The notes beneath the pieces were generated by a model. The model saw only the letters and a program-made list of their open reading frames with translations. It did no database searches and had not been told where the DNA came from. A stretch of 64,000 bases of DNA from Malacoraja senta (taxonomy: Eukaryota): assembly GCA_038087875.1 (NCBI GenBank), contig CM075986.1:17608001-17672000 (forward strand), read 5' to 3'. The translations under genes and the position numbers were made by a program. This document shows, piece after piece, positions 1 through 62,815 of this stretch (the first letter of the stretch is position 1; the number at the start of each line of letters is the position of its first letter).

Positions 1-206
1 GCCATCAATAGTGGAAATGATGTTGATACAGCAGTGCCAGGCATCTGAAATAGTTCGGATGCAAGTAATCTGTATGCAGCCTGCTCAATCCATCAACTCA
101 CAAAAACTGGCAATACGCTATTGCCATGCAAGTGCATTGCGACTCAGGATCTCGGCAAGCCAAAAACTAATTAACAAATAGAAATGCAATGCAAAAGCCC
201 AAATTA

Positions 207-317
<111 letters not shown>

Positions 318-650
318 CTAAAACAATACAATATTATTAAAAAATGAAAGTAGCTAACCAGTGTTTTGCAGAAATAAACTATGAAATTGCCTTAGCAAGT
401 TTAAAAAGCCAAATAACCACTGATCCTGATTATTGATCAACGCTTGCTGTATATTAATTCTACGTTAAGGTGATGCTTGATATTAAGCGGTGTACTAACA
501 ATGACAACTTGTAAATATGAAACAAAAGGACATTTAATCATAATTTCAAAAGCCTCAGACAAAAATGGTGTAGAAAATAAATCTAGTGCATTTGGAAGTA
601 AACATATTTCCCATTAAAACAAATGTGTGGTAGCAGTAACTTTGCAAATA

Positions 651-1246
651 CAGTAAACTCGTTATAACAGACCATGGGGAGAGGGGAATGGTATCCGTTA
701 TTGTTGATTATCCGCTATAATTAAGAACGGGGGGGTAAATATTAACTAGTTGAACGCAAAGCCGGGTGAGAAGCATGGGGCTGAGGGGGGTTAAACCAGG
801 GGGACATTTAAAGGCTGGGGAGCCCACAGAGCTACACACAGTGTAGCAGGGACATGCCTGTACTCGCGCTGCCTTCATGCTGCTCACTCTCTCTGCTCCC
901 GCAATAGGAAGCATGCCTGGGGGTCTGCTCGTTTGGTAACCTGGCGGAAGCGGTCTAAGGGGAGACTCGTGCCGTTACCAGGCAGCCGGGGCACATGTTG
1001 CTGGGGCGACACAGGTGCAGTGGCGTGTGCTGCGTCTGCATCTAACACCCCGGGCAAAGCCGTGCCCAACGCAACGCTCTTCAAGAGTGTTTTACAATTT
1101 GAACTCCGCCCGCCGCTGCCTTTCTGCTGCCCAACGCCACGCGTTGTCCGCCAACTACCACCACGAATGGACACCTTGGTCCGCTAGAACTGAAATCCGT
1201 TAACCAGTGTGATTAAAATATTAACTGTGGATGTTAAAGTTAACTG
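651..1246. mobile_element. Probable Tc1/mariner (Tigger-like) non-autonomous element
   Basis: TA|CAGTAAACTCGTTATAAC start, ...AACTG|TA end, GC-rich interior. Confidence 0.45.
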
Positions 1247-1321
1247 TATTTGAACAGAGCTGTAAAATAGATAATGAAAATGCGGCTTCTTTAAAAAAAA
1301 GCCTTTAAAATTTCTACCTAC

Positions 1322-1369
1322 ATCACTACTTGCTCTCCCTCCATTTCCACACCTCTGCTCTCTCAGTGT
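1322..1369 (-). CDS. STAT3: STAT3 exon 14 (TLREQRCGNGGRASSD)
   Basis: 48 nt, polyT-CTTCTAG acceptor, GTAGGT donor. Confidence 0.96.
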
Positions 1370-2104
1370 CTAGAAGAAAAAAAAATAACTCATTAGCCCA
1401 CTTAATTGTGACTTGGAAGTCAAATGTACTGCAGTTTCAGTTTGCGTGTTAAAGAAGTAGAAGTGGCAAATACTGGTGAAGAGATTCTGTTAATTACTGT
1501 TGTTTAATCACAAAATAAAAATGCAAGCCAGTGGCAAGGTTAGAACTTAATTATAAATAACAAGTTTATTTTCATAAACATAAAGAGCCAAAATAGGGTC
1601 TTTAGGCCACAATCAGGTATTTATCGATATGAATCACACTTGGTCACACATCCTTATGGCAATTCAAGCACTCATCCAGAGTTTAAGGATGGGAGTTTGG
1701 TGGTATCTGGGAAACATTTTTTTTAATTAAGTGCTCATCCAGTTACTTCATTAAAAAAATGTTTCCCAGATCCCACCTAACTCTTGTCCTTAAACCCATG
1801 TCCTCTGGTTTTAGATGTCTCCATTATGAGAAAATTGTCTCACTGTATGCCATTCAAATGAGTTGGTTATCCTTTAAATTGCATTCGAGGGTAATACAAA
1901 GAGCTGTACATTACATTGAGAAAAGTGACTTAATATATTTCATAACCTTTATGCACTACCATTACTTTGTAGCGAACTAGAAGAAGGCTTCACCAGACAA
2001 GTATAATTGGTCTAACTACCATATTACAGTAATGTATTAATTGTATCAAAAATAAACACAGCAGAAAATGCAGAATTCCAGTTTTATACACATTGGCATG
2101 AATG

Positions 2105-2397
2105 TTTAGTTTAGTTTAGAGATACAGAGCGGAAACCACCGAGTCCGTACCGACTAGTGATCCCCGTACACTAACACGATCCTACACACACTAGGGACAA
2201 TTTACATTTATACCAAACCAATTAACCTACAAGCCTGTACGTCTTGGAGTGTGGGAGGAAACCGAAGATCTCAGAGATAACCCACTCGGTCACGGGGAGA
2301 ATGTACGAACACCGTACAGACAGCGCCCGTAGTCAGGATCGAACCCGGGTCTCTGGCGCTGCAAGGTAGCAACTCAACCGCTGCGCTACCATGCTGC
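2105..2397 (-). mobile_element. tRNA-derived V-SINE (HE1-like) with CR1-type 3' tail
   Basis: Box B GGTTCGATCC on the minus strand, V-domain (TTCTCCCCGTG...TTTCCTCCCACACTCCAAG), (CTAAA)n tail. Confidence 0.85.
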
Positions 2398-2407
2398 TCC
2401 AGAGTTA

Positions 2408-2677
<270 letters not shown>

Positions 2678-2922
2678 TTAAGCTGGTATTCTTCTAGGTC
2701 TTTCTCCAGAACTAATTTGTCCTCATGTTTTGTGCTTGTGAAGAACCTTCTTCAGTTAACCCACCAGATCAAAATAAACTCCATCACATGCAATTTATAA
2801 TAGATCATGTGTTCCTCTATCTATCCTGCTTGTTGTACTAATAATTCAGGAAGCATGTCTACTTAAAATCTACAGTTTTAAAAGCTTGGAGAAATGTTGC
2901 ATTTTAATGCAGATTTCTTGTA

Positions 2923-4512
2923 CAGGTACGCGACAGTATTTCTGGAAACTGATGGCACCTCCTTTAATCAGGACAAAATTACGAGAGCACACTTGAAATC
3001 ATCCCCAGAAGTCCTCCTGAAAATGTGGCGCTTAAGCCGTGTGAGGCTGCCAATCTCGTCGGGACTTCCTATCGTTGGGTCCAATTTACTCCCTGCACAG
3101 CCAGGGCTCTGGAACTCCAACCCGGCCAGATACGGGAAACTGTTCCCATAGCTGTCTTCCGTGGAAGACATTGCGGGCCAGTATCTTGGCCCCCTGGCAG
3201 CCTAGGAAGACCGTTCCAGTACCATTTGACTCCTCTGGTTCCTGCAGTCCGGCCTGCTTCTGACTGCAGGAATGGCGGGTGCACCGGCCCTACTGCATTT
3301 TTGGCAGATTCGGCAAATCTCGGCGGTGGCTGGTAATCCTGCTGGGAAAGCGGCACCTCGACCCTGCGGGCCCACCGATCCGACCCACATCTGGACTTCC
3401 GAGGGAAATTCGTTAAACGGAGCATGGGCTACGGTGGGCGGCGCGACTCTCGTCAGCAGCGGCCTCTGCAGTCCGTCTGTCTTTTTATTATTTTTGTCTC
3501 GTTTCTATGTAGTTTTTATTATTTATTTCTTTGTCGGGGTATGTGTGTGGGGGGGTGGGGGTGGGGGGGGGAAACTTTAAAATCTTTCCCCTGCACGGGA
3601 GACCCGACCTTTTCTTTGTCGGGTCTCCGTTGTCGTTGGGGCTGGGCAACGTGGAGCGGCCTCCAGCAGGAACGACCTGGGGCTCCAGTTGCGGAGCTGC
3701 GGACTACTCACCGTCACGGGGCTGGCCGAGTCCGGAGCGGGTGGAGCTGTGGTGGAGCGGTGTTGCGACCCGACCCCCGGAGATTCGGAGGCTACAACCG
3801 CGGGTCTGGCGGACGGCAACACCGGAAGCCCGCAGGTCCCTGGTGGGAGACCGCTTTTCGGGGCTTCCGCAGCGGTGACTTCTCCCGCCCGAGTTGCGGG
3901 GTTGAAGAGCACCTGGAGCGGGGCTTTACATCACCGCCCCGCGCGGCTTAGAATTGCCGCGGGACTTTTCGAGCGCGTGCCGGGGCTCTTACACCAAGAC
4001 CCGGTGCGCGACCTTGCATCACCCGGCGCGGCTTTAATGGCCGCGGGACAATCACCATCGCCCGCCGGGGGCTTTGACTTTGACATCGGGGGGGGGGGGG
4101 GGGCGGGAGTGCAGTGGAGAGATACAGTTTTTTTGCCTTCCATCACAGCGCTGTGATGGATGTATGTGTAAATTGTGTTGTGTCTCGGGTCCTTTTCGTT
4201 TTGTAATGTATGGCTGCAGAAACGACATTTCGTTTGGACCTCAACGGGGTCCGAATGACAAATAAATTGTATTGTATTGTATTGTACCCGTGCAAGAAAT
4301 GCAAGTTTCACTGTAAACCTAATTTACCTTCAATATTTGTTTTATTAAAGGTTTTTGCAGTTCATGGTGCTTTTGAGACACAAGAGGGGTATAATTAGTG
4401 GGTCTGTGGTGTATTGTTGAATTATTATTACATGACCTCTCTTGGTCCATCAAAACGGTAACCCGGCAAGTCTCTGGAACCAAGGGTGCCAGAAAAATCG
4501 GTGGTGGGCCTG
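2923..4512. mobile_element. TA-flanked TcMar-type non-autonomous DNA element, interrupted by a GC-rich retroelement
   Basis: TA|CAGGTACGCGACAGTATTTCTGG versus CCAGAAAAATCGGTGGTGGGCCTG|TA, imperfect TIRs. Confidence 0.5.
3430..4286 (+). mobile_element. GC-rich non-autonomous LINE-derived element with stem-loop and (ATTGT)n tail
   Basis: Ends ...GGACCTCAACGGGGTCCGAATGACAAATAAA(TTGTA)n; architecture shared with the elements at 13503 and 41818. Confidence 0.75.
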
Positions 4513-4540
4513 TATTTATACTACAGCAAAACTCGAATGT

Positions 4541-5204
4541 TGTTGAGCTGGGTGTGGATTTTCCAGACTTAGGATATTATGTCCAATTAATCCCCAAATA
4601 CAGGTTGCTTTCACTTTTTGTTTTAAACATACACATTACACAATGCAATACATTTTCTGGTGAAACAGTTGAACGTGAATTCTAGCTCCCTCGGTGTCCT
4701 GACCAGCAGCTCTGGCTGAATGTATTAAAATGCACCCTGTGTGCACTAAATGTTATGGTTGCCATGCAATGGAGGTGATAGTTGGTATTATATTTGAATT
4801 AGCAGCTGTAGAACTAGATTGGGATTTTAAAATCAACCTGTGTAGCAATTGTGAAATTTGAAAGTTATCAACATAGTACTCAAACTTCCAGACACAAAAT
4901 TCATGGGTAAAACTCCGATAATCCGGCATCTGTTTGTTCAGCATCCTGCTGGGCCAGCATCAAGCTCAGTCATTCATCCAGAAAGTAAGCTTGTCTGCTC
5001 ACCGAGCACGAGAGACATGCAGCCAGAGCTACAGGTTCAGGACACCGAGGGAACTAGAATTCCAGTTCAACTGTTTCACCTGAAAATTTATTACATCGTG
5101 TAGCGTGTATGTAAAAAAAGTGAAACCAAACTGTATTTGTGGATTCATTGGGCATTATATCCCAAGTCTGGAAAATCCACTCACCCAGCTCAACCAACTT
5201 TAGT
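4541..5204. repeat. About 190-bp inverted repeat pair (4541-4733 and 5016-5204), probably a MITE
   Basis: GTTGAGCTGGGTGTGGATTTTCCAGACTT versus AAGTCTGGAAAATCCACTCACCCAGCTCAAC; TA-CAG...CTG-TA outer ends. Confidence 0.7.
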
Positions 5205-5544
5205 GCTTCACTGTAATTTAAATATAATAATTCTACATTAAAATGCAACATTTCACCAAGCATTTGAAGTAGACATGCGTTGTGGAATATTATTACCATC
5301 AGGATACTGGAATTGCACAACAGGCAAAAGGAAAGGCCAGATCACTACTCATCTTACCAAAGAGCCAGCTAACATAGTAAAGCAATTTAAATCTTACTTG
5401 CTCGTTGTGTAAACAAATTTGATTCTTATTTTTAGCCTGGAGTATAGATTGCCTACCATGTATACCTATGCCCTGGTCAGACGAACAGGTGTACATGGTA
5501 GGTCATCTGTACAACACAGTTGTAAGCATTTTGTAGGATTTCCA

Positions 5545-6055
5545 CCAAGGCCTGCTGGATCTCCTGGTGCTAATCATTTTAACTTCCCTTCCCATACTGA
5601 TCTTTCTGTCCTGGGCCTCCTCCATTGCCAGAGTGAGGCCACACACAAACTGGAGGAACAGCACTTCATATCCTGCTTAGGACCCAATAGTATGAACATT
5701 GAATTCTCCTACTTAAGGTAACAACCTACTAACAATCCCCATCTAATTTCCTACATCCCACCTAGATTTTCATCCATTTCTCTCCCCAGCCTATATTCTT
5801 TCCACTGGCTTTACAATTTGCACCTCTCCTATCCTTGTCTCACTCTTTTTGTCCCTTCATCTCTGGGCCTTGTCCAGGCATCTATCTAACAACCACACCT
5901 CTCCCTCCCCTTCCGCTCACCTGTATACACTTATCACTTGCCAGGCTTTATCCTTCCCCCATTATCAGCCTGGAGAAGGCCCCCCCAAGAAACATCACCT
6001 ATTCATGGTACCCAGAGATGTTGACTGACCCACTAAGTTACTCCAGCACTGCATC
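5545..6055 (+). mobile_element. Penelope-like element 3' remnant (ORF C-terminus plus pLTR)
   Basis: ANHFNFPSHTDLSVLGLLHCQSEATHKLEEQH...GPNSMNIEFS resembles the GIY-YIG C-terminus of chondrichthyan Penelope elements; a degenerate pLTR follows. Confidence 0.75.
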
Positions 6056-6215
6056 TATTGTAGAAGGTTAATTGCCAGTTCCATAACATCTTACATCTGC
6101 TCATGATACAATAAATTTGCAACTCGGTGGAAAGTATAAGGAATAGTTTATTAGAAAGACTCAAAATATATTAACCAACATAAAATGAAGTTATAAAAGG
6201 AAAAGAAAATCTCAC

Positions 6216-6245
6216 CCCCTCAACGTAGAACCATCTCCAGAATCC
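6216..6245 (-). CDS. STAT3: STAT3 exon 12, 30-nt micro-exon (DSGDGSTLRG)
   Basis: TTTCAG acceptor, GTGAGA donor; size and phase match human DSGDVAALRG. Confidence 0.92.
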
Positions 6246-7152
6246 CTGAAACAAGATAGACAGACATCATTAGAGTAGTTATTCTGATAAGATCTGTGCT
6301 GTTATAAATTCAGTGGAAATTGAATGATAAAGTAAAGGATATTCTTTTGTAATTTGGAATGCATGAAGCAGTTTTCTTCTCTTCTCTCTCTTCAAACTCC
6401 TCCCCTCCACAAAAGGGAAAAACAAGCAAAGCTTATGTAACTTCACCTTGTCTCACACTCCAATCCTTATCATTTGCACTGTACTACTTCTCACATAAAT
6501 ACACCTTTGCAAAGGTGCTCTTTCCAATATTCCACACAGCACTCTAGCTATACTTTAAGGCTCTGTAAAAGTGACCTACAGATCACTCTCTTTTGTAGTC
6601 CAGCCCGTTGAATTAAGTCTATTAGCCATTCAACCGCAGAGGTCTAGGTCAGCTAGGTGACTTTACCTTGAACAATAAACAACACCAATTAATTTGTGGT
6701 AATGTTTTCAAGCACTGACCTCAAGTAGTTCAGTCTATAACCGCAACACGCTTCCAAATACCATGTAGTGGAAACATTTTAAAGTTACATCAATAGACTG
6801 ATGCTATATTACTTAGATGCTGCTGGGAAATAAAGTTTAATGTTTCATTGTCCCTTGACAAATGAAACTGAAAACATGGTATACAAGTCAGACTTGGGGA
6901 CCATTAGCATTGATAAGTGTGCGGTGTACAGGGAGATTGCCAGATAAAATGCATGTACTATCATTTAAAAAAATATGGCATACTAATTTTGTATTAAAAA
7001 AAATAATATATACTTTTGGGTAAAAAAAAAGGAATTGTGCTCTTATAGTGGAAAAACTCATCTGTTAGAAAATACAGTACCAAATATTCCACGCAAAATC
7101 TATACATCCAGAATTAACACTATGGTTTAGTTTGTACTTCATTTGTACTCAC

Positions 7153-7212
7153 TTGTCAATGGCAACCTTGATCTTTAGCTGATAATTTAACTCCGGAAAC
7201 TTAACAAGCAAC
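7153..7212 (-). CDS. STAT3: STAT3 exon 11 (LLVKFPELNYQLKIKVAIDK)
   Basis: 60 nt, TCTCAG acceptor, GTGAGT donor. Confidence 0.97.
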
Positions 7213-9541
7213 CTGAGAACAGAAAGTATATATTATATGTACTGTAAAAGACTAAAGCACAAATGTAATTGCTGCATTATATGCTCAAAGATGACAAAGG
7301 GCATCAGGCGTTATGGTGAGAAGGTAGGGGAATGGGGTTAGTAGGGAGAGATAGATCAGCCATAATTGAATAGCGGAGTAGCAATGATGAGCCAAATGGC
7401 CTAATTCTGCTATCACTTTTGACCTTATGACATATTGTGGTCTATTTGCAGGAAACCTTTTAGCAAATAATGGTGCAGGAAATGACTCACTGCAGTGATA
7501 ACATCTTGAGGGAAATTTCCTCACAGAAGGACCAAATTAATCAAGGCTGCTAAGTCTACTTGCAACACCTTATTTAAATAATCATAGTGTCATTTTCACC
7601 TCATTAAAGCAATTTTACCTGCCAACGGATGTATAGTCTGATAATTTGACATGTCCCAAGCATTTCAAAACAAGACTGGTACATGAAATCCATTCAAAGA
7701 GCACATCAATTGCCAATAACATGTTCGGCATTCCCTTGGGATTGAAGATGACTTGCTTCTATTCTGGTCAGAGGTAGCTAATGAGGGCAAAACGAGAACC
7801 ACAGACTCGTCCACCGTTGGAACAGGTGACGGGCAAGATGGGACATTCCTTCTGCTGTTTACACAGGGTTTCTGCATGCTCAGGAAACACTACCCAGGGG
7901 TTCTCAATACCATCCTAAATAATCCTCCATTTTGACCAGCCAAGTGGCACAGGTTCCATGTTTGTTGCTCGGGCAGCTAGCATTATTTTTGCATAGAGTG
8001 TGAGCTATTTTACCTGCATTGATTCAGACACAAACCAGCATATGGCATGAAGATTATTGTTGTAATTCCACTATTGAATTATTGGTTAAAGCAGTGTTTC
8101 AAACTTTTGAATCCTTTTGCAGTTTAAACCCACCGATTATTTAGAACTATATTTTTATAATTTCTGCACAGATCTGTAGATATCTTTGTAAACATGCTTT
8201 TGCTGAATTAGAAGGAATGATTTTACTTTCCTGCGAATTATGTTGTTAATAAATGTGCAAATGATTTACAGTGTTAGTGGCAATTTCAGCATTATCCTTC
8301 AGGGCTCTCGTCAATGGTTGCAAGATCTTTTGAATAGACCACCACAAAAATTGGATACCCTCTCAATAGTGCCAATGTTTCATCTAATTCATGCAGAATG
8401 GGTGGACAGCCCTGTATCTAAACATCAAATTAAAAACACTAGCACATCCAACAACACACCAATGCCAGCAACGCAATGAAGTACTGAATTACATCTCTGC
8501 TTCAAGTGATGACTAGAACATAAAAACCAGGCCTGTTATTCTGCCCGTCACATCTGATCCAACATTCAATAATGTTGCCGCTTAAACACTACTCTCCTAC
8601 ATTACTTCAACATCTCTGAAAATCTCTTGGTTAGTCTTCTTCGCATGCACAGCAACTGGGCCTCCACAGTCCTCTAGAATGGCCCTTTATTTTGAGACAG
8701 TGACCTCTGGTTCAAGAGTATGTTTACACTGGTTAGTGTAAATATCAACTCTAGAAAATTCAGAGTACAGGCCTTGTCGGTTTATCTTTCATCCCATGAA
8801 AAATCCCGCTACCCCAGAAAATCAACCTAGTGGGCCTTCACACCACCCTCTCTCTCAGTCACAACTGTACATAATGTTTCAGATGCAATCTTACCAGACC
8901 TCTACATAGATGGAGAAGGACATTTCTACTCTTGCAGTCAAATTAAATCTTCATGCAAAAGGCATCAATGCATTTTTGGCCCTCCTAACCGTTGCTGAAC
9001 CTGCATTTTCCCTTGCAGTGAACAAGGACACCCAGGTCCCTCTGATTACAAACACCTTTCAGGCTCTCATCATTAAAAAAAACATTTCCATTCTGCTTGA
9101 ATCTCAATTTCCAGAAAATGAGATTACTACTGAGACAACTCAATTGCATGTCAGAAATTATGTGAAATGTTTGGATATTCAGTGATGACATTTAGCAGAA
9201 CTCAGTATTTTTATTTTAAAATGTCACGACACTACAATTCCAACTCAATTTTAAAAATGTATTAAAGATGACCAATTAGCAATCAACCACAATAAAAGAA
9301 CTGATCATCTAATAATCAGTCTGATCAGTCTGAAGAAGGTTATCGACCCGAAATGTCACCTATTCCTTTGCTCCATAGATGCTGCCTCACCCGCTGAGTT
9401 TGTCCAGTATTTTTGTCTACCTTCGATTTTTTCAGCATCTGCAGTTCCTTCATAAACATCCAATAATTCAGATGTGTATTCTGCCAGAACAACCTACAAT
9501 GCTTTTGTAGGAGTGCATTGGCATGTTTGTTTTATTACTTA

Positions 9542-16695: not shown

Positions 16696-16912
16696 TGTAG
16701 GAAGGAACTGCAGATGCTAGTTTAAATTGAAGATAGACACAAAATGCAGGAGTAACTCGGCGGGACCGGCAGCATCTCTGGAGAGAAGGAATGGTTGATG
16801 TTTCGGGTCGAGACTCTTCAGTCTGAAGAAGGGTCTCGAGACGAAACGTCATCCATTGCTTCTCTCCAGAGATGCTGCCGTTCCCGCTGAGTTACTCCAG
16901 CATTTTGTATCA
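16696..16912. mobile_element. Palindromic Penelope pLTR-derived element with hammerhead-like core (16823-16850)
   Basis: Inverted arms; CTGAAGA-AGGGTCTCGAGAC-GAAAC-GTC. Confidence 0.75.
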
Positions 16913-18314: not shown

Positions 18315-18539
<225 letters not shown>

Positions 18540-26079: not shown

Positions 26080-26700
26080 TTCTCTGTGCGGTCGGCAGCG
26101 TGGACTCGGTTAGTAGGGGTTAGCAGGGAGAGGGGGTGTTGGGCCCGGGCCCAGGCCTGGCCCTCACCTACCCGAAGCCTCCGCCGGCGGAGCAGCACAA
26201 GTCCCGGCCTCAGTCCCCACACACCGTCTGCCCCATCCACGCTTCACAACCTTCGATCAGCCCGCAGTCGATCACAAAACCGGTTCGGAAAGGTTCCTGG
26301 AAGCTGAGAGACTTCAAGGAATGTCAATGTCTGTCAGTAAACCGACAGAAGCGCACCTCCCTCATCCCCTCCCCTGGGCCAACCTACCTTGCTCGCCCTG
26401 ATGGACAGCCGCGCCGACCATTCAGAAGCGGCCGCCCCATCCTCCTCTAGACACGCCCCTGAACGCCGGCCAATGGGGGCCGCGCGAAGGCGGGTTCAGG
26501 GTTCAAGTTTGGTTGACCGGTGCGGAGCGCGGTTATTCCCCGCGGCTGTTCCTTCCCGCCGACTCTCTCCCCCCGGCCGCTCATCCGCTGGCGCTGGGGA
26601 GAAGCCTCGCAGCGGAGGGAGGAGCGCCATGTATCTGGAATCACCGCGGCTGCGAAATCAGCTGAGTTACTGGCAGTGGTGACGCATCGGCCCGATGGCC
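26080..26700 (-). promoter_or_regulatory. STAT3: STAT3 CpG-island promoter and probable non-coding exon 1 (candidate donors at 26387, 26171 and 26167)
   Basis: Non-repeat GC/CpG-rich island upstream of exon 2. GC boxes at 26432-26460, CCAAT at 26470-26474, SBE-CRE element. Exon 1 limits cannot be fixed from sequence alone. Confidence 0.75.
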
Positions 26701-27316
26701 ATTGCCAGAGAACAAAGTAATGGCACTTGTGCTCAGCAATCAAAAACTTAGGAGTGTTTTATTGTCACATGTCTTATTTGCAGCAGCACAACAGGTTTGC
26801 AACGACAGTACTCGATAGATAATATAATAAAGAAACAAACAAAGGAGTTAAATAAATAAAGAAAACCCAATTTGTGCAAAATAAACAGTTGGAGATAGAC
26901 ACAGAAAGCTGGAGTAACTAACTCAATGGGACAGGCAGCATCTCTGGAGAGAAGAATGGGTGACTCAGTCTGAAGAAGGGTCACGACCCAAAACGTCACC
27001 ATTCCATCTTTCCAGAGATGCTGCCTGTGTTACTCCAGCATTTTGTGTCTATCTCCAGCTTTGTTTTGTTTTTTTGCACAAATTGGGTTTTCTTTATTTA
27101 TTGAACTTCTTTGTTTCTTTATTATATTATCTATTGAGTACTATCTTTGCAAACCTGTTGTGCTGCTGCAAATATGACATGTGACAATAAAACACTCCTA
27201 AGTTTTGATTGCTGAGCATGTGCCATCACTTTGTTCTCTGGCAATGGCCATCGGGCGATACGTCACCAGTGCCAGTAATTCAGCTGATTTCGCAGCCGCG
27301 GTGATTCCGGTACATG
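26628..27316. repeat. Large imperfect inverted repeat (arms about 26628-26964 and 26994-27316) centred on a Penelope pLTR remnant
   Basis: The right arm is the reverse complement of the left over about 320 bp, e.g. GAATCACCGCGGCTGCGAAATCAGCTGA versus TCAGCTGATTTCGCAGCCGCGGTGATTC. Confidence 0.95.
26658..26687 (-). promoter_or_regulatory. STAT3 autoregulatory SBE+CRE element (minus strand GCGTCACCACTGCCAGTAACTCAGCTGA)
   Basis: CRE-like TGACGCA at 26680-26686 next to a low-affinity SBE TGCCAGTAA at 26667-26675 and a CAGCTG box. Resembles the recalled mammalian STAT3 IL-6 response element (GTCACGCACTGCCAGGAACTCAGCTGA). Confidence 0.75.
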
Positions 27317-27499
27317 CTCAGCAACCTATATTTACAGTAGGTTTGCACATTAACTGGAGGCGGCTGATAATACAATCATTTGAATAAACAGCTGCTGTGA
27401 TAGAATCTAATTACTTATCAGAACAAAGGTCTGTCAAACATTATGTGCTCAGTATAAGCTGACAGGCTTCTGCAAATATTGCGAATCAGTATTATATAA

Positions 27500-27660
27500 C
27501 TAGACCAAGTGGGACCCATTGGGCCCCGTTCCCCCAACGCAATAATCCACCACTCACCCGTTCCCCCAACGCAACCCGCTTCCACCACTCAACCGTGTTT
27601 CCTACACAGCACAACGTTTCCTACTCAGCACCTTGATTCACAGTAGGTCGACGTTGGAAT
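27500..27660 (-). mobile_element. Helitron 3' end fragment
   Basis: Minus strand ends in hairpin GGGGCCCAATGGGTCCC then ACTTGGTCTAG|T; same terminus as 44028. Confidence 0.6.
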
Positions 27661-28091
27661 CATACAGAGGACACTAACTTTGTTCATAAACTTCTGGTTG
27701 TCTACCCTGCCACCCAAATACCCTGTACATTTCCTTGAAAAGTCGACCAAAAGTACATGGTGAATGGTGTCAGAGTAGGTTTGGAATAAAGACGGCTCCA
27801 TGTAGTCAACAAAGACAAAGCATTGTGAGGGCCCATGTGAGTGCCCATGATTACACTTTTAATTTGTAGAAAGTGGGAGGAATCAGAAAATAATTTGTTA
27901 CTGGTGAGAACAAGTTCCCTCATGTGGGGGAGAGGGTTAAGAGAGGGGAACTGGTTAGATGTAAGTTCTGGAAAGAAGCAGCGGGCCCTAAAGCCTTCAT
28001 GTCTGGATGGAGGTGTATGTAGACTGCATGTCTACGGTAAAGATGAAGCGGTAGGGCGCAGGGAATTGGAAATTAATGAAGTGGTGGATTT

Positions 28092-29276: not shown

Positions 29277-30570
29277 TAACCATATAACAATTACAGCAAT
29301 GAAACAGGCCATCTCGGCCCTTCTAATCCGCCGAACACTTACTCTCACCTAGTCCCATCTACCTGCACTCAGACCATAACCCTCCATTCCTTTCCCGTCC
29401 ATATACCTATCCAATTTATTTTAAATGATAAAATCGAACCTGCCTCCACCACTTCCACTGGAAGCTCATTCCACACAGCTACCACTCTCTGAGTAAAGAA
29501 GTTTCCCCTCATGTTACCCCTAAACTTCTGTCCCTTAATTCTCAAATCATGTCCTCTTGTTTGAATCTTCCCTACTCTCAATTAAAAAAAGCTTATCCAC
29601 GTCAACTCTGTCTATCCCTCTCATCATAACCTTCTGCGCTCCAAACAATAAATACCTAACTTGTTCAACCTTTCTCTGTAACTTAGTTGCTGAAACCCAG
29701 GCAACATTCTAGTAAATCTCCTCTGTACTCTCTCTATTTTGTTGACATCTTTCCTATAATTTGAAGACCAAAATTGTACACCATACTTCATAATTGGGCC
29801 CACCAATGCCTTGTACAATTACAGCACACCAAAAGCTTTCTTTACCACCTTATCTACATGAGATTCCACCTTCAGGGAACTATGCACAGTTATTCCTAGA
29901 TCCCTCTGTTCAACTTCATTCCTCAATTCGCTACCATTTACCATGTACGTCCTATTTTGATTTGTCCGGCAAGATGTACCACCTCACACTTATCAGCATT
30001 AAACTCCATCTGCCATCTTTCAGCCCACTCTTCCAAATGGCCTAAATCTCTCTGTAGATTTAAAAATCTACTTCATTATCCACAACACCACCTATCTTAG
30101 TATCATCTGCATACTTACTAATCCAATTTACCACACCATCATCCAGATCATTGATGTATATGACAAACAACAGTGGACCCAACACAGATCCCTGAGGCAC
30201 CCCACTAGTCACTGGCCTCCAACCTGACAAACAGCCATCCACCATTACTCTCTGGCATCTCCCATTCAGCCACTGTTGAATCCATCTTGCTACTCCACCA
30301 TTAATACCCAACAATTGAACCTTCTTAACCAACCTTCCATGTGGAACCTTGTCAAAGGCCTTACTGAAGTCCATATAGACAACATCCACCGCTTTACCCT
30401 CATCAATTTCCCTAGTAACCTCTTCAAAAAATTCAAGAAGATTAGTCAAACATGACCTTCCAGGCACAAATCCATGTTGACTGTTCCTAATCAGACCCTG
30501 TTTCCAGATGCTTATATATATTATCTTTAAGTATCCTTTCCATTAATTTGCTCACCACTGATGTCAAACA
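29277..30570 (-). mobile_element. 5'-truncated CR1/HER1 LINE inserted in the ERV
   Basis: RT motifs [24 protein letters not shown] and KYADDTK; C-terminal TRGH..FFTQRVV..WNELP; CR1 3'UTR. Confidence 0.95.
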
Positions 30571-44028: not shown

Positions 44029-44749
44029 TGTTCTTTAAATTTGTTGAATATCCTTCTTAGAGGGGCTGCATCTGGAAGATAAATGGCAGTGAAATGCTGA
44101 TGTGCATGCACAGTGCACAGCGTCGACGGCTGATTTAAAGGCGAACTGATCTGCAACTTGATAGTTGGATGAAGGATGATTCTTAATGAAGGACGTGTAC
44201 AGTTTAGTGAGCCACTGCTCACAAAGCTACATAGACAATATGGCCCGATGAGGTGATGAAGAATTACAGGCTCTGTGACATTTGTTGTCCAACAAATAAT
44301 CATCCAGTAAATTGTTCAAATTCTATCCGTATTTACACAAAATAAAAATTGAGTCAGCTTGGATTTTTGTTAATTAAATTTTTGAATTGCAAGTTAATCT
44401 CTCTTTACCTGTTCATCACTCCCCTTTGGTTCTGTTTCCCATCATCTTACATCAAGGGATAAGTTACAGTAGACAATGACTTATTGTTGGTGCAAACCAC
44501 AGCACTCAGAGAAAACCCACACAGGCAGGTGGAGAACATGCAAACTCCACGCAGAGAACACCTGAGGTCACGATTAACTTTGTGCTGCTGGAAGCAGCTC
44601 ACCAGCATTTATTGTCTCCTGGCAGACTGTACAGCAGTGGTTTTCTGGATCATCCTTCTACTGCTTCCATCTATCCAAGGTCAGGATTGGACACATTCAC
44701 TGATGTTTGCTCAATGTCAAATCCACCAGTTACTCCTCAGATATTGAAT

Positions 44750-44982
44750 AATGACACAAGATTGCTGGAGTAACTCATCGAGTCAGGCATCATCTCTGGA
44801 GAACATGGATAGGTGACATTTTGGGTCGTGACCCTTCATTAAAGCGGGTCTGAAGAAGGGCCCTGACCCGAAAACATCACCTATCCATGTTCCCCAGAGA
44901 TGCTGCCTAACCCACTGAATTGCTCCAGCACTTTGTGTCGTTTTTTTGTTAAACAATCAACTGCAGTTCCTTGTTTCTACAT
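44750..44982. mobile_element. Palindromic Penelope pLTR-derived element
   Basis: Inverted arms around a degenerate hammerhead core at about 44850-44880. Confidence 0.7.
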
Positions 44983-48987: not shown

Positions 48988-49713
48988 TTACTCAATTCTC
49001 CTTTTCTGAAGCAGGAGTTCGGTCTCAATATCCGCGTCATCCTCCAGTGATTCCTCGTGGATTTCTTCAATAAGGAGATCAGTGTTGTCTTCATCTTCTA
49101 CAATGTGTTCCTCTCCCTGGCCTTCCATCATCTCCACTTCCTGCACCACCACATCCCCGTCTCTCATCTTTTTAACCCAGAAGGTAAACGGTGGGATCCT
49201 GTAGACGGTCGTCCGACACCTTGCTGTCTTTTGATGATTTGGTGAGAAGGACTTCCTCAGCTTTGATCTGGAGTCTTTCATCTTCTCCTTCCGTTCCTGT
49301 GTTACTATCTTGTTGCCGAGCTTATTCATTTTTTTTTCAAGTGTGTGCCTTGTCTTTTCCAGATTTTCTTTTGTCGCTACCCTGGTCTTCTCCACACTCT
49401 CCCTTGTTCTCAGCCGGGTCTTCTGCAGATTATCCCTTGTCCTTTGCTTAGCCTTTTCCATTGATTCCTTGGAGAATGCTTTCTTGAAATCTTCCATTCG
49501 CTTCATGCTAGTCTTCTTGACACGGACGGCTGTTGTTTCCTCTTCAATTACTTCAAGTTCAACGTCTTCATCAGAGGAGAGTGAGATGTTATCACCTTCA
49601 GGCGTCTCCTCATTGGTCACAAGCTCTTTTCCGGCTTCACTTTCTTCGGGTGCCTTCAGGCTTTCTTTCACAGACTTCCCGAGGCTCAATTTCACCGGCA
49701 TTGGTGTTTCATC
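48988..49713 (-). CDS. CAVIN1: CAVIN1 (PTRF) last coding exon, DETPMPVKLSLGKS...LLLQKRRIE*
   Basis: LSSDE acidic block, DFKKAFSKE, ENLEKTRHTLEK undecads, LRKSFSP and VYRIPPFTF motifs. TTTTCCAG acceptor at 49714-49715. Adjacent to STAT3 as in mammals. Confidence 0.95.
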   Translation of the reverse strand, partial: DETPMPVKLSLGKSVKESLKAPEESEAGKELVTNEETPEGDNISLSSDEDVELEVIEEETTAVRVKKTSMKRMEDFKKAFSKESMEKAKQRTRDNLQKTRLRTRESVEKTRVATKENLEKTRHTLEKKMNKLGNKIVTQERKEKMKDSRSKLRKSFSPNHQKTARCRTTVYRIPPFTFWVKKMRDGDVVVQEVEMMEGQGEEHIVEDEDNTDLLIEEIHEESLEDDADIETELLLQKRRIE

Positions 49714-57065: not shown

Positions 57066-57694
57066 AGGGCCTGTCCCACTTGGCTGTCTTTTGCGCGCCA
57101 TTTACGCGACCTGCTAGCGTGTGGGCAGCGTGTGGGTAGCGCGTGGGTAACGCGTGGTTAGCGCGGGATGGGCGCATGGAGTGGTGTGGAGGAGTGTGGA
57201 CTTCGTCCTGAACGAAATCTTCGCGCGCCACCGGCCTGTCGCATAACTGACGGCCAAAGTGGGACGCAACGTCTCACCTCCAACAAGCGATCGTCGAACT
57301 CGGCCTGGGGCTGCACGGCCGTTGCGGATCCGGATCCGGCCCCACTCCTACTCCCAGAGCGGGGCCAAGAAGATTGAAGATAGACACAAAATGCTGGAGT
57401 AACTCAGTGGGACCGGCAGCATCTCTGGAGAGAAGAATGGGTGACGTTTCGGGTCAAGACCCTTCTTTTGGACTGAAGAAGAGTCTCAACCCGAAACATC
57501 ATCCATTCCTTCTCTCCATAGATGCTGCCGGTCCCGCTGAGTTACTCCTGCATTTTGTGTCTATCTTCAAATGACATCACGCGCTCCAGACGGCTGTGCG
57601 AACGCATGATGACGCGCACGAATCTCGCGGGACCATCGCGTGTCAGTCACTACCGGCCTGTCGCGTAAGTGACGGCCCAAGTGGGACAGGCCCT
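57066..57694. mobile_element. PIF/Harbinger-like MITE with a nested Penelope pLTR palindrome (57373-57571)
   Basis: AGGGCCTGTCCCACTTGG and CCAAGTGGGACAGGCCCT TIRs. Confidence 0.8.
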
Positions 57695-62587: not shown

Positions 62588-62815
62588 GGTACACAAAAAT
62601 GCTGGAGAAACTCAGCGGGTGCAGCAGCATCTATGGAGCGAAGGAAATAGGCAACGTTTCGGGCCGAAACCCTTCAGACTTCAGTCTGAAGAAGGGTTTT
62701 GGCCCGAAACGTTACCTATTTCCTTCGCTCCATAGATGCTGCTGCACCCGCTGAGTTTCTCCAGCATTTTTGTGTACCTCCGATTTTCCAGCATCTGCAG
62801 TTCCTTCTTTAACAC
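62588..62815. mobile_element. Young palindromic Penelope pLTR-derived element with intact hammerhead core (62686-62713)
   Basis: Near-perfect inverted arms of about 90 bp; 16-bp direct repeat AACCATGTTGGTGGGA at 62572-62587 and 62816-62831; CTGAAGA-AGGGTTTTGGCCC-GAAAC-GTT. Confidence 0.85.

What the first reader, a model, noticed from the sequence alone, without database searches (positions are those of the whole stretch)
26628..27316. Penelope-centred fold-back duplication copied the STAT3 SBE-CRE autoregulatory element
Seen: a ~690-bp imperfect palindrome. From outside in, each arm holds unique promoter DNA (about 26628-26748), a Rex-like tail fragment and a Penelope pLTR, with a hammerhead-like core as the spacer (about 26965-26998). 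The mirrored copy keeps the SBE (TGCCAGTAA, 27270-27278), a CRE half-site (ATACGTCA, 27258-27265) and the CAGCTG box. The arms are about 85-90% identical by eye, which argues against an assembly artefact. Inference: PLE insertion or template switching duplicated host regulatory DNA. STAT3 may thus have two divergently oriented cytokine-response elements about 600 bp apart, with possible effects on autoregulation, upstream antisense transcription or cruciform formation.
Basis: partly seen in the sequence, partly recalled or inferred. Interest (0 to 1): 0.75.

Follow-up and report, generated by a model that had tools for sequence, protein, structure and literature searches.

The report
Old fold-back copy of STAT3 promoter module
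Just upstream of the skate STAT3 gene, a 689-base mirror-image duplication centred on a hairpin-shaped jumping-element remnant made a second, inverted copy of a promoter module conserved since before skates and bony fish split, and that copy looks like a passive by-product.

Summary
Window 26628-27316 is a 689-bp imperfect palindrome with arms 26628-26964 and 27316-26995. The arms share 297 matches, 18 mismatches and 29 gap bases.

It is not an assembly artefact. Short-read contigs from two samples of the same species and from two related species carry both arms and the outer junction, at single-copy depth. The structure therefore predates those species splits.

The outer about 90 bp of each arm is unique DNA. 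The left copy sits beside the CpG-rich STAT3 exon 1 region. Its core (26615-26689) aligns to the stat3 upstream region of a teleost in gene-sense orientation, so it is the ancestral promoter module.

The centre is one of the very abundant about 190-bp fold-back Penelope-tail units, noted elsewhere in this genome by the scan (s1-187587, s1-200045). Four other units in the window stop at their own ends. Only this one extends about 258 bp into flanking DNA.

Best reading: fold-back synthesis primed at that hairpin copied the flank, and a short homology joined it back. Whether host repair or the element's reverse transcriptase did this is open.

The mirrored copy shows no extra constraint. One relative has lost its CRE half-site. 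Function is untested and looks unlikely. The 'hammerhead' core here is degenerate, and the 'Rex-like' label is untested.

The parts
18399..18527 (-). STAT3 first coding exon (start codon plus 43 codons); fixes gene identity and orientation
   Evidence: Six-frame scan. The PDB search gives the STAT3 N-domain 4zia as best hit, E 6e-23, against STAT1 at 1.7e-16.
26380..26627 (-). CpG-rich region (GC 0.69, CpG o/e 0.96): presumed STAT3 core promoter and non-coding exon 1. It holds a ZNF341-like bipartite motif (26545-26571) and a CCAAT box (about 26471-26475). It is not part of the palindrome.
   Evidence: The region is collinear with the Goodea stat3 upstream region. The transcription start was not mapped.
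26628..26717 (-). Left arm, outer part (A): unique DNA and ancestral distal promoter module. Read on the minus strand it holds a CRE half-site (TGACG, 26680-26684), the SBE-like 9-mer (26667-26675) and the CAGCTG box.
   Evidence: Single-copy depth. The stretch 26689-26615 aligns to Goodea L003 6973-7046 at 74% over 77 nt, E 1.2e-5; local score 32 against shuffles 13.3 +/- 1.4.
26718..26885 (+). Left arm, middle part (B): fragment of a moderately repeated retroposon-like element with an A-rich end abutting the central unit. It is unclear whether 26722-26741 ('t') belongs to the element or is flanking DNA.
   Evidence: Depth is 10-500 times single copy. A second family copy at 20152-20023 aligns to 26718-26860.
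26886..26964 (-). Left half of the central fold-back unit (U): inverted Penelope-tail mini-copy. It lacks about 20 nt of its hammerhead-like core and carries a 4-nt duplication.
   Evidence: blastn to other units; alignment A1; word depth about 1e6.
26965..26994 (+). Spacer: the right half's hammerhead-like core. CTGAAGA is at 26970-26976 and the helix II hairpin at 26978-26989. At 26990-26994 the sequence is AAAAC where the family consensus has GAAAC.
   Evidence: No Rfam hammerhead match.
26995..27067 (+). Right half of the central fold-back unit (U), with an 8-nt deletion relative to other units.
27068..27218 (-). Right arm, middle part (B'): inverted copy of B.
   Evidence: Contigs from relatives cover 27011-27141 and 27113-27249.
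27219..27316 (+). Right arm, outer part (A'): derived inverted copy of the promoter module. SBE-like 9-mer at 27270-27278, CRE half-site at 27258-27265, CAGCTG at 27282-27287. All 7 CpGs are kept.
   Evidence: A contig covering 27177-27522 has zero differences in two samples of the species, and relatives have contigs covering 27230-27517.
27309..27326 (+). Outer junction. An 18-nt stretch matches 16 of 18 positions, in direct orientation, with the sequence at the A/B border of the arms (26722-26741; mirrored at 27207-27224). Its first 8 nt overlap the end of A', so it is the candidate homology used to seal the fold-back.
   Evidence: score 17 against a shuffle maximum of 13 in 2000 shuffles. 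The 18 nt outside the palindrome alone give p about 0.02.

Best explanation
This is a genuine, evolutionarily old fold-back (hairpin-primed) inverted duplication. Before the event, the region upstream of the skate STAT3 promoter read: distal promoter module A, then an old retroposon fragment B, then a palindromic about 190-bp Penelope-tail unit U. A break or a stalled fork at or in U let the 3' end fold back on U's own hairpin. DNA synthesis then ran back along the same strand for about 260 nt, copying B and about 90 bp of unique promoter DNA in inverted orientation. The new end was released and joined to the far side of the break through a short homology (GGYACATG). Later small deletions near the centre (about 20 nt and 8 nt, plus a 4-nt duplication) broke the symmetry and probably stabilised the palindrome. 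The result is a second, outward-facing copy of the conserved CRE-half-site/SBE-like/E-box module, 603 bp from the original. It lacks the core promoter and appears to be drifting neutrally. Shown here: the structure, its reality in several samples and species, the uniqueness and deep conservation of A, the polarity (left is ancestral), and the central unit being a natural palindrome. Inferred: the fold-back steps, the polymerase involved and the neutrality of the copy.
For: Structure. Not an artefact: in two samples of the species, contigs cover 26300-26772, 26744-26880 and 27177-27522 at single-copy depth, the last with no differences. Two other species have contigs covering 26300-26716, 26697-26917, 27011-27141, 27113-27249 and 27230-27517. 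Words from the right-arm and junction stretch occur in at least eight coded organisms. Depth in A and A' is about 5 and 22 word-depth, equal to the unique flanks; B is 50-9000 and U about 1e6. A is ancestral promoter: it adjoins the CpG island, and its core aligns to the Goodea stat3 upstream region as a single copy in gene-sense orientation (E 1.2e-5; z about 14). Goodea's protein is STAT3. At 26666 and 26685 the left arm keeps the teleost state and the right arm is derived. The centre is a natural palindrome: five fold-back units lie in the window. Four have arms of 89-99 nt ending at the element's ends, and only this one extends 258/259 bp further. Junction homology. Age: four arm mismatches in A/A' are shared by all three species, while 27219, 27269 and a 1-bp deletion are specific to the window's lineage. 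Known mechanisms: fold-back priming at breaks and short inverted repeats makes inverted duplications (PMC10622511, PMC3907307, PMC3315005).
Against: No outgroup with the empty site was obtained, so the pre-event arrangement is only inferred. Short-read contigs cannot cross U, so the direct adjacency of the two halves of U rests on the assembly alone. The 18-nt junction repeat has more than one reading: a target-site duplication of B, the start of a second B-family copy, or chance plus microhomology. The sequence after it is only weakly B-like (p about 0.04). Classical fold-back at a break gives a hairpin-capped or dicentric chromosome unless synthesis aborts early, and an interstitial 330-bp outcome needs that extra step. 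The neutrality of A' rests on very few substitutions, and all 7 of its CpGs survive, which could hint at a protected, unmethylated state.
Confidence: 0.6

Rival explanations
1. Insertion-coupled origin. The Penelope-like element's own reverse transcriptase made the palindrome in one event. cDNA was primed on the nicked plus strand at the A-rich end of B. It reached the 5' end of the truncated RNA, snapped back on itself (the usual way these elements gain an inverted partner copy) and did not stop at the element's end. It continued about 260 nt into the covalently attached host DNA before the intermediate was resolved.
For: Penelope-like insertions typically carry an inverted 5'-truncated partner copy, and the mechanism is still undefined (PMC8557442). 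The centres of the five fold-back units in the window all differ, as expected if each inverted pair forms anew at insertion. The palindrome's symmetry starts exactly at the element's outer ends, with no intervening target-site duplication. U abuts the A-rich end of B, a plausible target. Divergence between the U halves (about 7%) is similar to that of B/B' and A/A' (about 5%), compatible with a single event.
Against: None of the four other units in the window shows any run-on into host DNA. The process would need strand-displacing DNA-templated synthesis by the element's enzyme over 260 nt, which has not been documented to my knowledge. The divergence figures are too imprecise to separate one event from two.
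Confidence: 0.25
2. The mirrored module is a working second cytokine-response element kept by selection. In this reading STAT3 in skates has two divergent SBE/CRE modules that strengthen autoregulation or drive upstream antisense transcription.
For: The SBE-like 9-mer and the CAGCTG box are intact in A' in all three species examined. A' keeps all 7 CpGs, with CpG o/e 0.98, amid CpG-poor repeats. The palindrome has persisted through at least two speciation events. Enhancer modules often act in either orientation (general knowledge).
Against: Between species A' changes as fast as the flank (4 of 98 against 10 of 201), whereas A shows 2 of 90. Since the duplication, the 53-nt core of A' has taken three to four substitutions plus an indel across lineages, against one in the left core. 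Two of the three arm differences in the core fall on positions identical between skate and teleost. Organism C has 27264 C>G, destroying the CRE half-site, and relatives have a CpG-to-TpG change at 27291. A' has no core promoter, ZNF341-like site or CCAAT box beside it. No plus-strand gene lies downstream; the next gene is CAVIN1-like on the minus strand. Fifteen intact bases are expected by chance at 5% divergence.
Confidence: 0.12
3. Assembly artefact: a chimeric fold-back long read or a mis-join created the mirror copy.
For: Palindromes with short spacers are a classic product of missed-adapter or fold-back long reads. Contigs cannot cross the central repeat.
Against: The arms differ by 18 substitutions and several indels. 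The right arm and its junctions with B' and with the unique DNA beyond 27316 appear in independent short-read contigs of two samples, at the same depth as flanking unique DNA. They also appear in two other species with their own substitutions.
Confidence: 0.02
4. The whole palindrome is a mobile fold-back or Pack-type element that captured promoter DNA and inserted here.
For: This genome has transposons carrying captured gene starts (earlier scan note s1-174993, not checked by me). Long terminal inverted repeats are typical of fold-back elements.
Against: A and A' are single copy in all four runs. The left copy is continuous with the CpG island and is collinear with a teleost stat3 promoter well beyond the palindrome's end. 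No other copy exists in the window.
Confidence: 0.01

Closest known systems
Fold-back (hairpin-primed) inverted duplications seeded by short inverted repeats or palindromes (yeast, E. coli, human constitutional and tumour rearrangements; PMC10622511, PMC3907307, PMC3315005)
   Same: Two inverted arms around a short spacer. A pre-existing inverted repeat lies exactly at the centre. Unique flanking DNA is copied. A short homology marks the outer junction.
   Different: The scale is tiny (arms of about 330 bp rather than kb to Mb). The event is interstitial, with no terminal deletion or amplification. It is fixed in the germline and shared by several species. The seed is a retroelement mini-insertion.
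Complex tandem/inverted insertion structures of Penelope-like elements (PMC8557442), including the fold-back 'tail' mini-insertions noted in this genome (s1-187587)
   Same: The central about 190-bp unit is of this kind: two 5'-truncated tail copies head to head, at very high copy number, with a hammerhead-like motif.
   Different: In the described structures, and in four other units in this window, the inverted repeat contains only element sequence. Here it continues about 258 bp into non-element DNA on both sides.
[quoted passage not shown]
   Same: It lies a few hundred bp upstream of the STAT3 start region and just upstream of a ZNF341-like bipartite motif, as described for human. It has a CRE-type half-site next to a non-canonical STAT-like site. 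The block is conserved from skate to teleost.
   Different: No mammalian sequence was available to align. The skate site is TTACTGGCA rather than TTCN3GAA, and the CRE is only a half-site. Binding and cytokine response are untested. Mammals are not known to have a mirrored second copy (my knowledge).
Origin-dependent inverted-repeat amplification and other replication template-switch models (PMC4689423)
   Same: A template switch between strands at a short inverted repeat generates inverted copies without loss of information.
   Different: Those models predict an inverted triplication with a third, direct copy. The DNA after 27316 resembles the left arm for only about 18 nt and then weakly at best.

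Membership tests
Fold-back inverted duplication | Two arms in inverted orientation separated by a short spacer | tested here: met
   Arms 26628-26964 and 27316-26995 with a 30-nt spacer.
Fold-back inverted duplication | A pre-existing short inverted repeat at the centre that can prime fold-back | tested here: met
   The central unit belongs to a family of natural palindromes with 89-99-nt arms; four other examples lie in the window.
Fold-back inverted duplication | The arms include DNA that was single copy before the event | tested here: met
   A and A' have the same depth as unique flanks in four runs. A is orthologous to a teleost promoter block present once.
Fold-back inverted duplication | Microhomology or short homology at the outer (resolution) junction | tested here: inconclusive
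   There is a 5-8 nt overlap (GGYACATG), and the next 10 nt also match the arm-internal sequence. The origin of this repeat is ambiguous.
Fold-back inverted duplication | The structure exists in the organism and not only in the assembly | tested here: met
   Independent contigs from two samples and two related species cover both arms and the outer junction. The very centre is not bridged by short-read contigs.
Hammerhead ribozyme | Match to a curated covariance model | tested here: not met
   No Rfam hammerhead family matches at E up to 10 at the locus, at an intact-looking unit, or at gathering score anywhere in the window.
Hammerhead ribozyme | Conserved catalytic core: CUGANGA, helix II, GAAA, and an NUH cleavage triplet | tested here: not met
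   The family consensus has CTGAAGA, a GC-rich hairpin, then GAAAC and GTC. It also has an extra A before helix II. This copy reads AAAAC at 26990-26994, so the G of GAAA is lost. The copy is hammerhead-like by eye only, and likely inactive.
Penelope-like element insertion (pLTR/tail) | 5'-truncated copy with an adjacent inverted 5'-truncated partner | tested here: met
   Half-units occur alone (about 10) or as head-to-head pairs (5) in the window, all sharing the same outer (3') end. The pattern is as described in PMC8557442.
Penelope-like element insertion (pLTR/tail) | Sequence continuity with an element encoding a Penelope-type RT plus GIY-YIG endonuclease | not tested
   No full-length parent was sought. 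The attribution rests on the structural pattern and on the earlier scan note s1-187587.
STAT3 autoregulatory IL-6 response element | Lies in the STAT3 promoter upstream of the start region | tested here: met
   STAT3 exon 2 is at 18399-18527 on the minus strand. The CpG island is at 26380-26627 and the block at 26637-26689 lies directly upstream on that strand.
STAT3 autoregulatory IL-6 response element | Evolutionary conservation of the block | tested here: met
   Skate versus Goodea stat3 upstream: 74% over 77 nt, including a 14-nt identical run. E 1.2e-5; score 32 against a shuffle maximum of 18.
STAT3 autoregulatory IL-6 response element | Canonical motifs: full CRE TGACGTCA and STAT site TTCN3GAA | tested here: not met
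   The left copy has TGACGCAT and TTACTGGCA; the right copy has TGACGTAT and the same 9-mer. The mammalian element is itself described as low affinity (PMC3427313).
STAT3 autoregulatory IL-6 response element | STAT3/CREB binding and cytokine-dependent activity | not testable with these tools

The most novel reading that the evidence does not exclude
A Penelope-like retroelement, while inserting next to the STAT3 promoter, snapped back and reverse-copied about 260 nt of the host DNA it was attached to. This would be a previously undescribed way for a retroelement to duplicate cis-regulatory DNA. The resulting inverted copy of a module conserved since the skate-teleost split would have been retained in skates as a second, working cytokine-response element.
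Probability: 0.05. Interest if true: 0.75.

Novelty: new member of a known kind. Interest (0 to 1): 0.4.

Why it matters
This is a clean, naturally fixed small-scale example of a process usually studied in yeast, bacteria, tumours and patients. A short palindrome, here a retroelement remnant, seeds a fold-back that mirrors neighbouring unique DNA. It shows one route by which abundant hairpin-forming mini-retroelements can duplicate host regulatory sequence. It also shows that a 689-bp near-palindrome can survive several speciation events once its centre is made asymmetric.

A by-product is evidence that the STAT3 distal promoter block, a ZNF341-like site and a CCAAT box keep their order and spacing between a skate and a teleost. 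That block holds a CRE half-site, an SBE-like site and an E-box. This layout gives a concrete target for testing how old STAT3 autoregulation is.

The functional claim about two response elements is the part that would matter most, and it is the least supported.

Tried and rejected
- **Rfam.** Scans of the locus, of the whole window and of an intact unit gave no hammerhead, only weak miRNA-like hits caused by the hairpin.
- **Mammalian promoter sequence.** Text searches for papers printing the mammalian Stat3 CRE/SBE sequence found only descriptions. PMC99807 is not held. The match to the mammalian element therefore stays untested.
- **Full-length STAT3 protein.** A search with exon 2 against the 50% representatives returned exon-sized ORFs and STAT1-like full-length proteins.
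- **Other orthologous loci.** L001 (unknown species, 7 kb upstream) and L002 (an eel, 10 kb upstream) do not contain the promoter block. Only the Goodea locus L003 does.
- **Empty site in other elasmobranchs.** A search with the ORF spanning the promoter (26447-26743, minus strand) found nothing.
- **Third direct copy.** The idea that the DNA after 27316 is a third, direct copy of the arm (an inverted triplication) was rejected. Similarity is 16 of 18 nt for 18 nt, then weak at best (p about 0.04).
- **Target-site duplication.** The idea that the 18-nt repeat is cleanly a target-site duplication of B was weakened. Another B-family copy aligns, marginally, into that stretch.
- **Scan-notes lookup.** A lookup of B by sequence in the scan's notes returned nothing.

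Full report
**What is there**

Reading 26300-27700 and the repeat finder show nested inverted pairs. A gapped self-alignment joins them into one palindrome. The left arm is 26628-26964 and the right arm 27316-26995. They share 297 matches, 18 mismatches and 29 gap bases, with a 30-nt spacer. As single-stranded DNA the 706-nt stretch folds into a single hairpin of -329 kcal/mol, against shuffles of -85 +/- 6.

**Gene context**

A six-frame scan finds the STAT3 start ([10 protein letters not shown]...) at 18399-18527 on the minus strand. Its best solved relative is the STAT3 N-terminal domain, E 6e-23, against STAT1 at 1.7e-16. A PTRF/SDPR (CAVIN1-like) last exon lies at 48988-49701 on the minus strand.

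The stretch 26380-26627 has GC 0.69 and CpG o/e 0.96. It is the likely core promoter and non-coding exon 1, although the start site was not mapped. The left arm therefore begins directly upstream of the STAT3 CpG island, on the gene's sense strand.

**Is it real?**

One read-laying run used four runs kept as short-read contigs. In two samples of the window's species, three contigs matter:
- a 3485-nt contig covers 26300-26772;
- a 137-nt contig covers 26744-26880;
- a 346-nt contig covers 27177-27522 with no differences, spanning B', A', the outer junction at 27316 and the unique DNA beyond.

All have the depth of flanking unique DNA (about 5 and about 22). These samples differ from the window at 26377 and 26462, so they are not simply the assembly.

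Two other coded species carry contigs over 26300-26716, 26697-26917, 27011-27141, 27113-27249 and 27230-27517. These differ from the window by about 4-5% and have their own indels. Both arms and the outer junction therefore exist in three species. An assembly artefact is excluded, and the event predates their divergence.

A second index search finds words of 27205-27475 in at least eight coded organisms. That result cannot say which part of the stretch they hold. Contigs break at the central repeat, so the adjacency of the two central halves rests on the assembly.

**Layers of the arms**

Word depth is single copy over 26629-26722 and 27240-27333. It is 50 to 9000 over about 26723-26863 and 27099-27239, and about 1e6 over 26911-27051.

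The centre is a member of a family seen throughout the window. About ten half-units stand alone. Five head-to-head pairs lie at 16727-16911, 26886-27057, 44744-44939, 57374-57575 and 62591-62775. This matches the published habit of Penelope-like elements of inserting as extreme 5'-truncated copies with an inverted 5'-truncated partner (PMC8557442). It also matches an earlier follow-up in this genome (s1-187587), which I checked only in part.

For the four other pairs, the palindrome ends at the element's own ends, with arms of 89-99 nt. Only the STAT3 one runs on for 258 and 259 bp.

Alignment A1 shows three changes in the STAT3 unit:
- it has lost about 20 nt of the left half's core;
- it has lost 8 nt of the right half;
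- it has gained a 4-nt duplication.

The 30-nt 'spacer' is simply the right half's core, left without a partner.

The core looks hammerhead-like by eye: CTGAAGA, a GC hairpin, then GAAAC and GTC in the family. However, Rfam reports no hammerhead here, in an intact unit or anywhere in the window. This copy reads AAAAC where the family has GAAAC.

The middle layer B is a moderately repeated element with an A-rich end next to U. A second copy at 20152-20023 aligns to 26718-26860. I could not test the 'Rex-like' label.

**Is the outer layer STAT3 regulatory DNA, and which copy is the original?**

I could not obtain a mammalian sequence. Papers describe the Stat3 IL-6 response element as a CRE plus a low-affinity STAT3 site, located just upstream of the ZNF341 site (PMC3427313, PMC10620851), but they do not print it.

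An outgroup was reachable. A Goodea atripinnis contig (L003) encodes a partial protein whose N-domain matches STAT3 (2.9e-70) far better than STAT1. About 3 kb upstream of its first coding exon, in gene-sense orientation and present once, lies a block aligning to skate 26689-26615 on the minus strand. Identity is 74% over 77 nt, E 1.2e-5. The local score is 32, against 13.3 +/- 1.4 with a maximum of 18 in 200 shuffles.

The run TGCCAGTAACTCAG is identical in both species. Downstream, TCAACC, CCCGCCT and a CCAAT box follow in the same order and at similar spacing. A ZNF341-like bipartite motif follows in both species, at skate 26545-26571 and Goodea 7089.

The left copy is therefore the ancestral distal promoter module. 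At the two informative arm differences (26666 and 26685), the left arm keeps the teleost base and the right arm is derived. The palindrome stops at 26628, so the CpG island, the ZNF341-like site and the CCAAT box were not copied.

**Does the mirrored copy look constrained?**

The table compares the window with organism B.

| Region | Coordinates | Differences |
|---|---|---|
| A (left, unique) | 26628-26717 | 2 of 90 |
| A' (right, mirrored) | 27219-27316 | 4 of 98, plus a 1-bp insertion |
| Unique flank beyond the palindrome | 27317-27517 | 10 of 201 |
| CpG island | 26300-26627 | 14 of 328 |

Within the 53-nt conserved core, the left copy has one change and the mirrored core three, plus an indel. 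Organism C adds 27264 C>G, which destroys the CRE half-site. The change 27291 C>T in the relatives is a CpG loss.

Of the three arm substitutions in the core, two hit positions shared by skate and teleost. The numbers are small, but they fit neutral drift of A' and constraint on A.

Two points favour function weakly. The 9-mer and the E-box are intact in all three species, although 15 bases surviving 5% divergence is unremarkable. A' also keeps all seven CpGs.

**Age**

In A/A', four substitutions between the arms are shared by all three species. By contrast, 27219, 27269 and the 1-bp deletion near 27255 arose in the window's lineage. Pre-split arm divergence of about 3.5% against species divergence of about 5% puts the duplication somewhat earlier than the split. 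This is a rough estimate.

**How it formed**

The centre of symmetry coincides with the centre of a natural palindromic unit. Symmetry continues from the unit's outer ends without any intervening direct repeat.

At the outer end of the right arm, 27309-27326 matches 16 of 18 positions, in direct orientation, with the stretch at the A/B border of the arms. The score is 17 against a shuffle maximum of 13. Its first 8 nt overlap the end of A'.

The simplest account has three steps:
1. A break or stalled fork occurs at U.
2. The 3' end folds back on U's hairpin and synthesis runs back through B and into A.
3. The new strand is released and anneals to the far side of the break through this short homology.

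These steps are documented for inverted duplications in yeast, E. coli and human (PMC10622511, PMC3907307, PMC3315005).

What the 18-mer was originally remains open. It could be a target-site duplication of B, or the start of a neighbouring B-family copy.

The main rival is that the Penelope-like element's own snap-back during insertion ran on into the attached host DNA. The differing centres of the five units and the similar divergence of all three layers allow this. The absence of any run-on in the other four units speaks against it. An inverted-triplication model is not supported, because no third direct copy follows 27326. The later central deletions probably helped the palindrome to persist; this is an inference from general knowledge of palindrome instability.

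**Verdict**

The structure is real, old and correctly described. Its origin as a fold-back seeded by a Penelope-type hairpin is well supported. The agent, host polymerase or element enzyme, is unresolved. The copied DNA does include a deeply conserved STAT3 promoter module. Nothing here indicates that the second copy functions, and the limited evidence points to drift. It is a neat new example of a known kind of rearrangement and not a new kind of system.

Noticed in passing
window 26545-26571 (minus strand); L003 7089-7113: A ZNF341-like bipartite motif (GGGAGR, an 11-13 nt spacer, then GGAASRGC) lies about 100 bp downstream of the SBE-like site in both the skate and the teleost Goodea. Only 2 matches to the relaxed pattern occur in the whole 64-kb window. 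This echoes the human layout described in PMC10620851. It is not included in the palindrome.
   Followed up: partly
window 26430-26530 (minus strand) versus L003 7140-7210: The skate and Goodea STAT3 upstream regions share TCAACC, CCCGCCT and a CCAAT box (ATTGG) in the same order. Both are about 200 bp from the SBE-like site, which suggests a conserved promoter layout beyond the duplicated block.
   Followed up: partly
window 27475-27615: A second very high-copy repeat (word depth up to about 1e6) with internal 32-35-bp direct repeats (CCCGTTCCCCCAACGCAA twice) lies just beyond the palindrome. Many contigs show 'goes back about 50' joints there, which suggests variable tandem copy number across the genome.
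   Followed up: no
window 30060-30467 (minus strand): A reverse-transcriptase fragment (Pfam RVT_1, E 8e-19) sits in the CAVIN1-STAT3 intergenic region. Its family was not determined.
   Followed up: no
window 27317-27440 versus 26742-26852: The DNA just beyond the right arm is weakly and collinearly similar to element B of the left arm, in direct orientation (score 18, p about 0.04 by shuffling). It may be an old second copy of the same repeat family, or it may be chance.
   Followed up: partly
window 26377 and 26462: Both samples of the window's own species read T and G where the window has G and A. These are either polymorphisms or assembly base errors in the CpG island.
   Followed up: no
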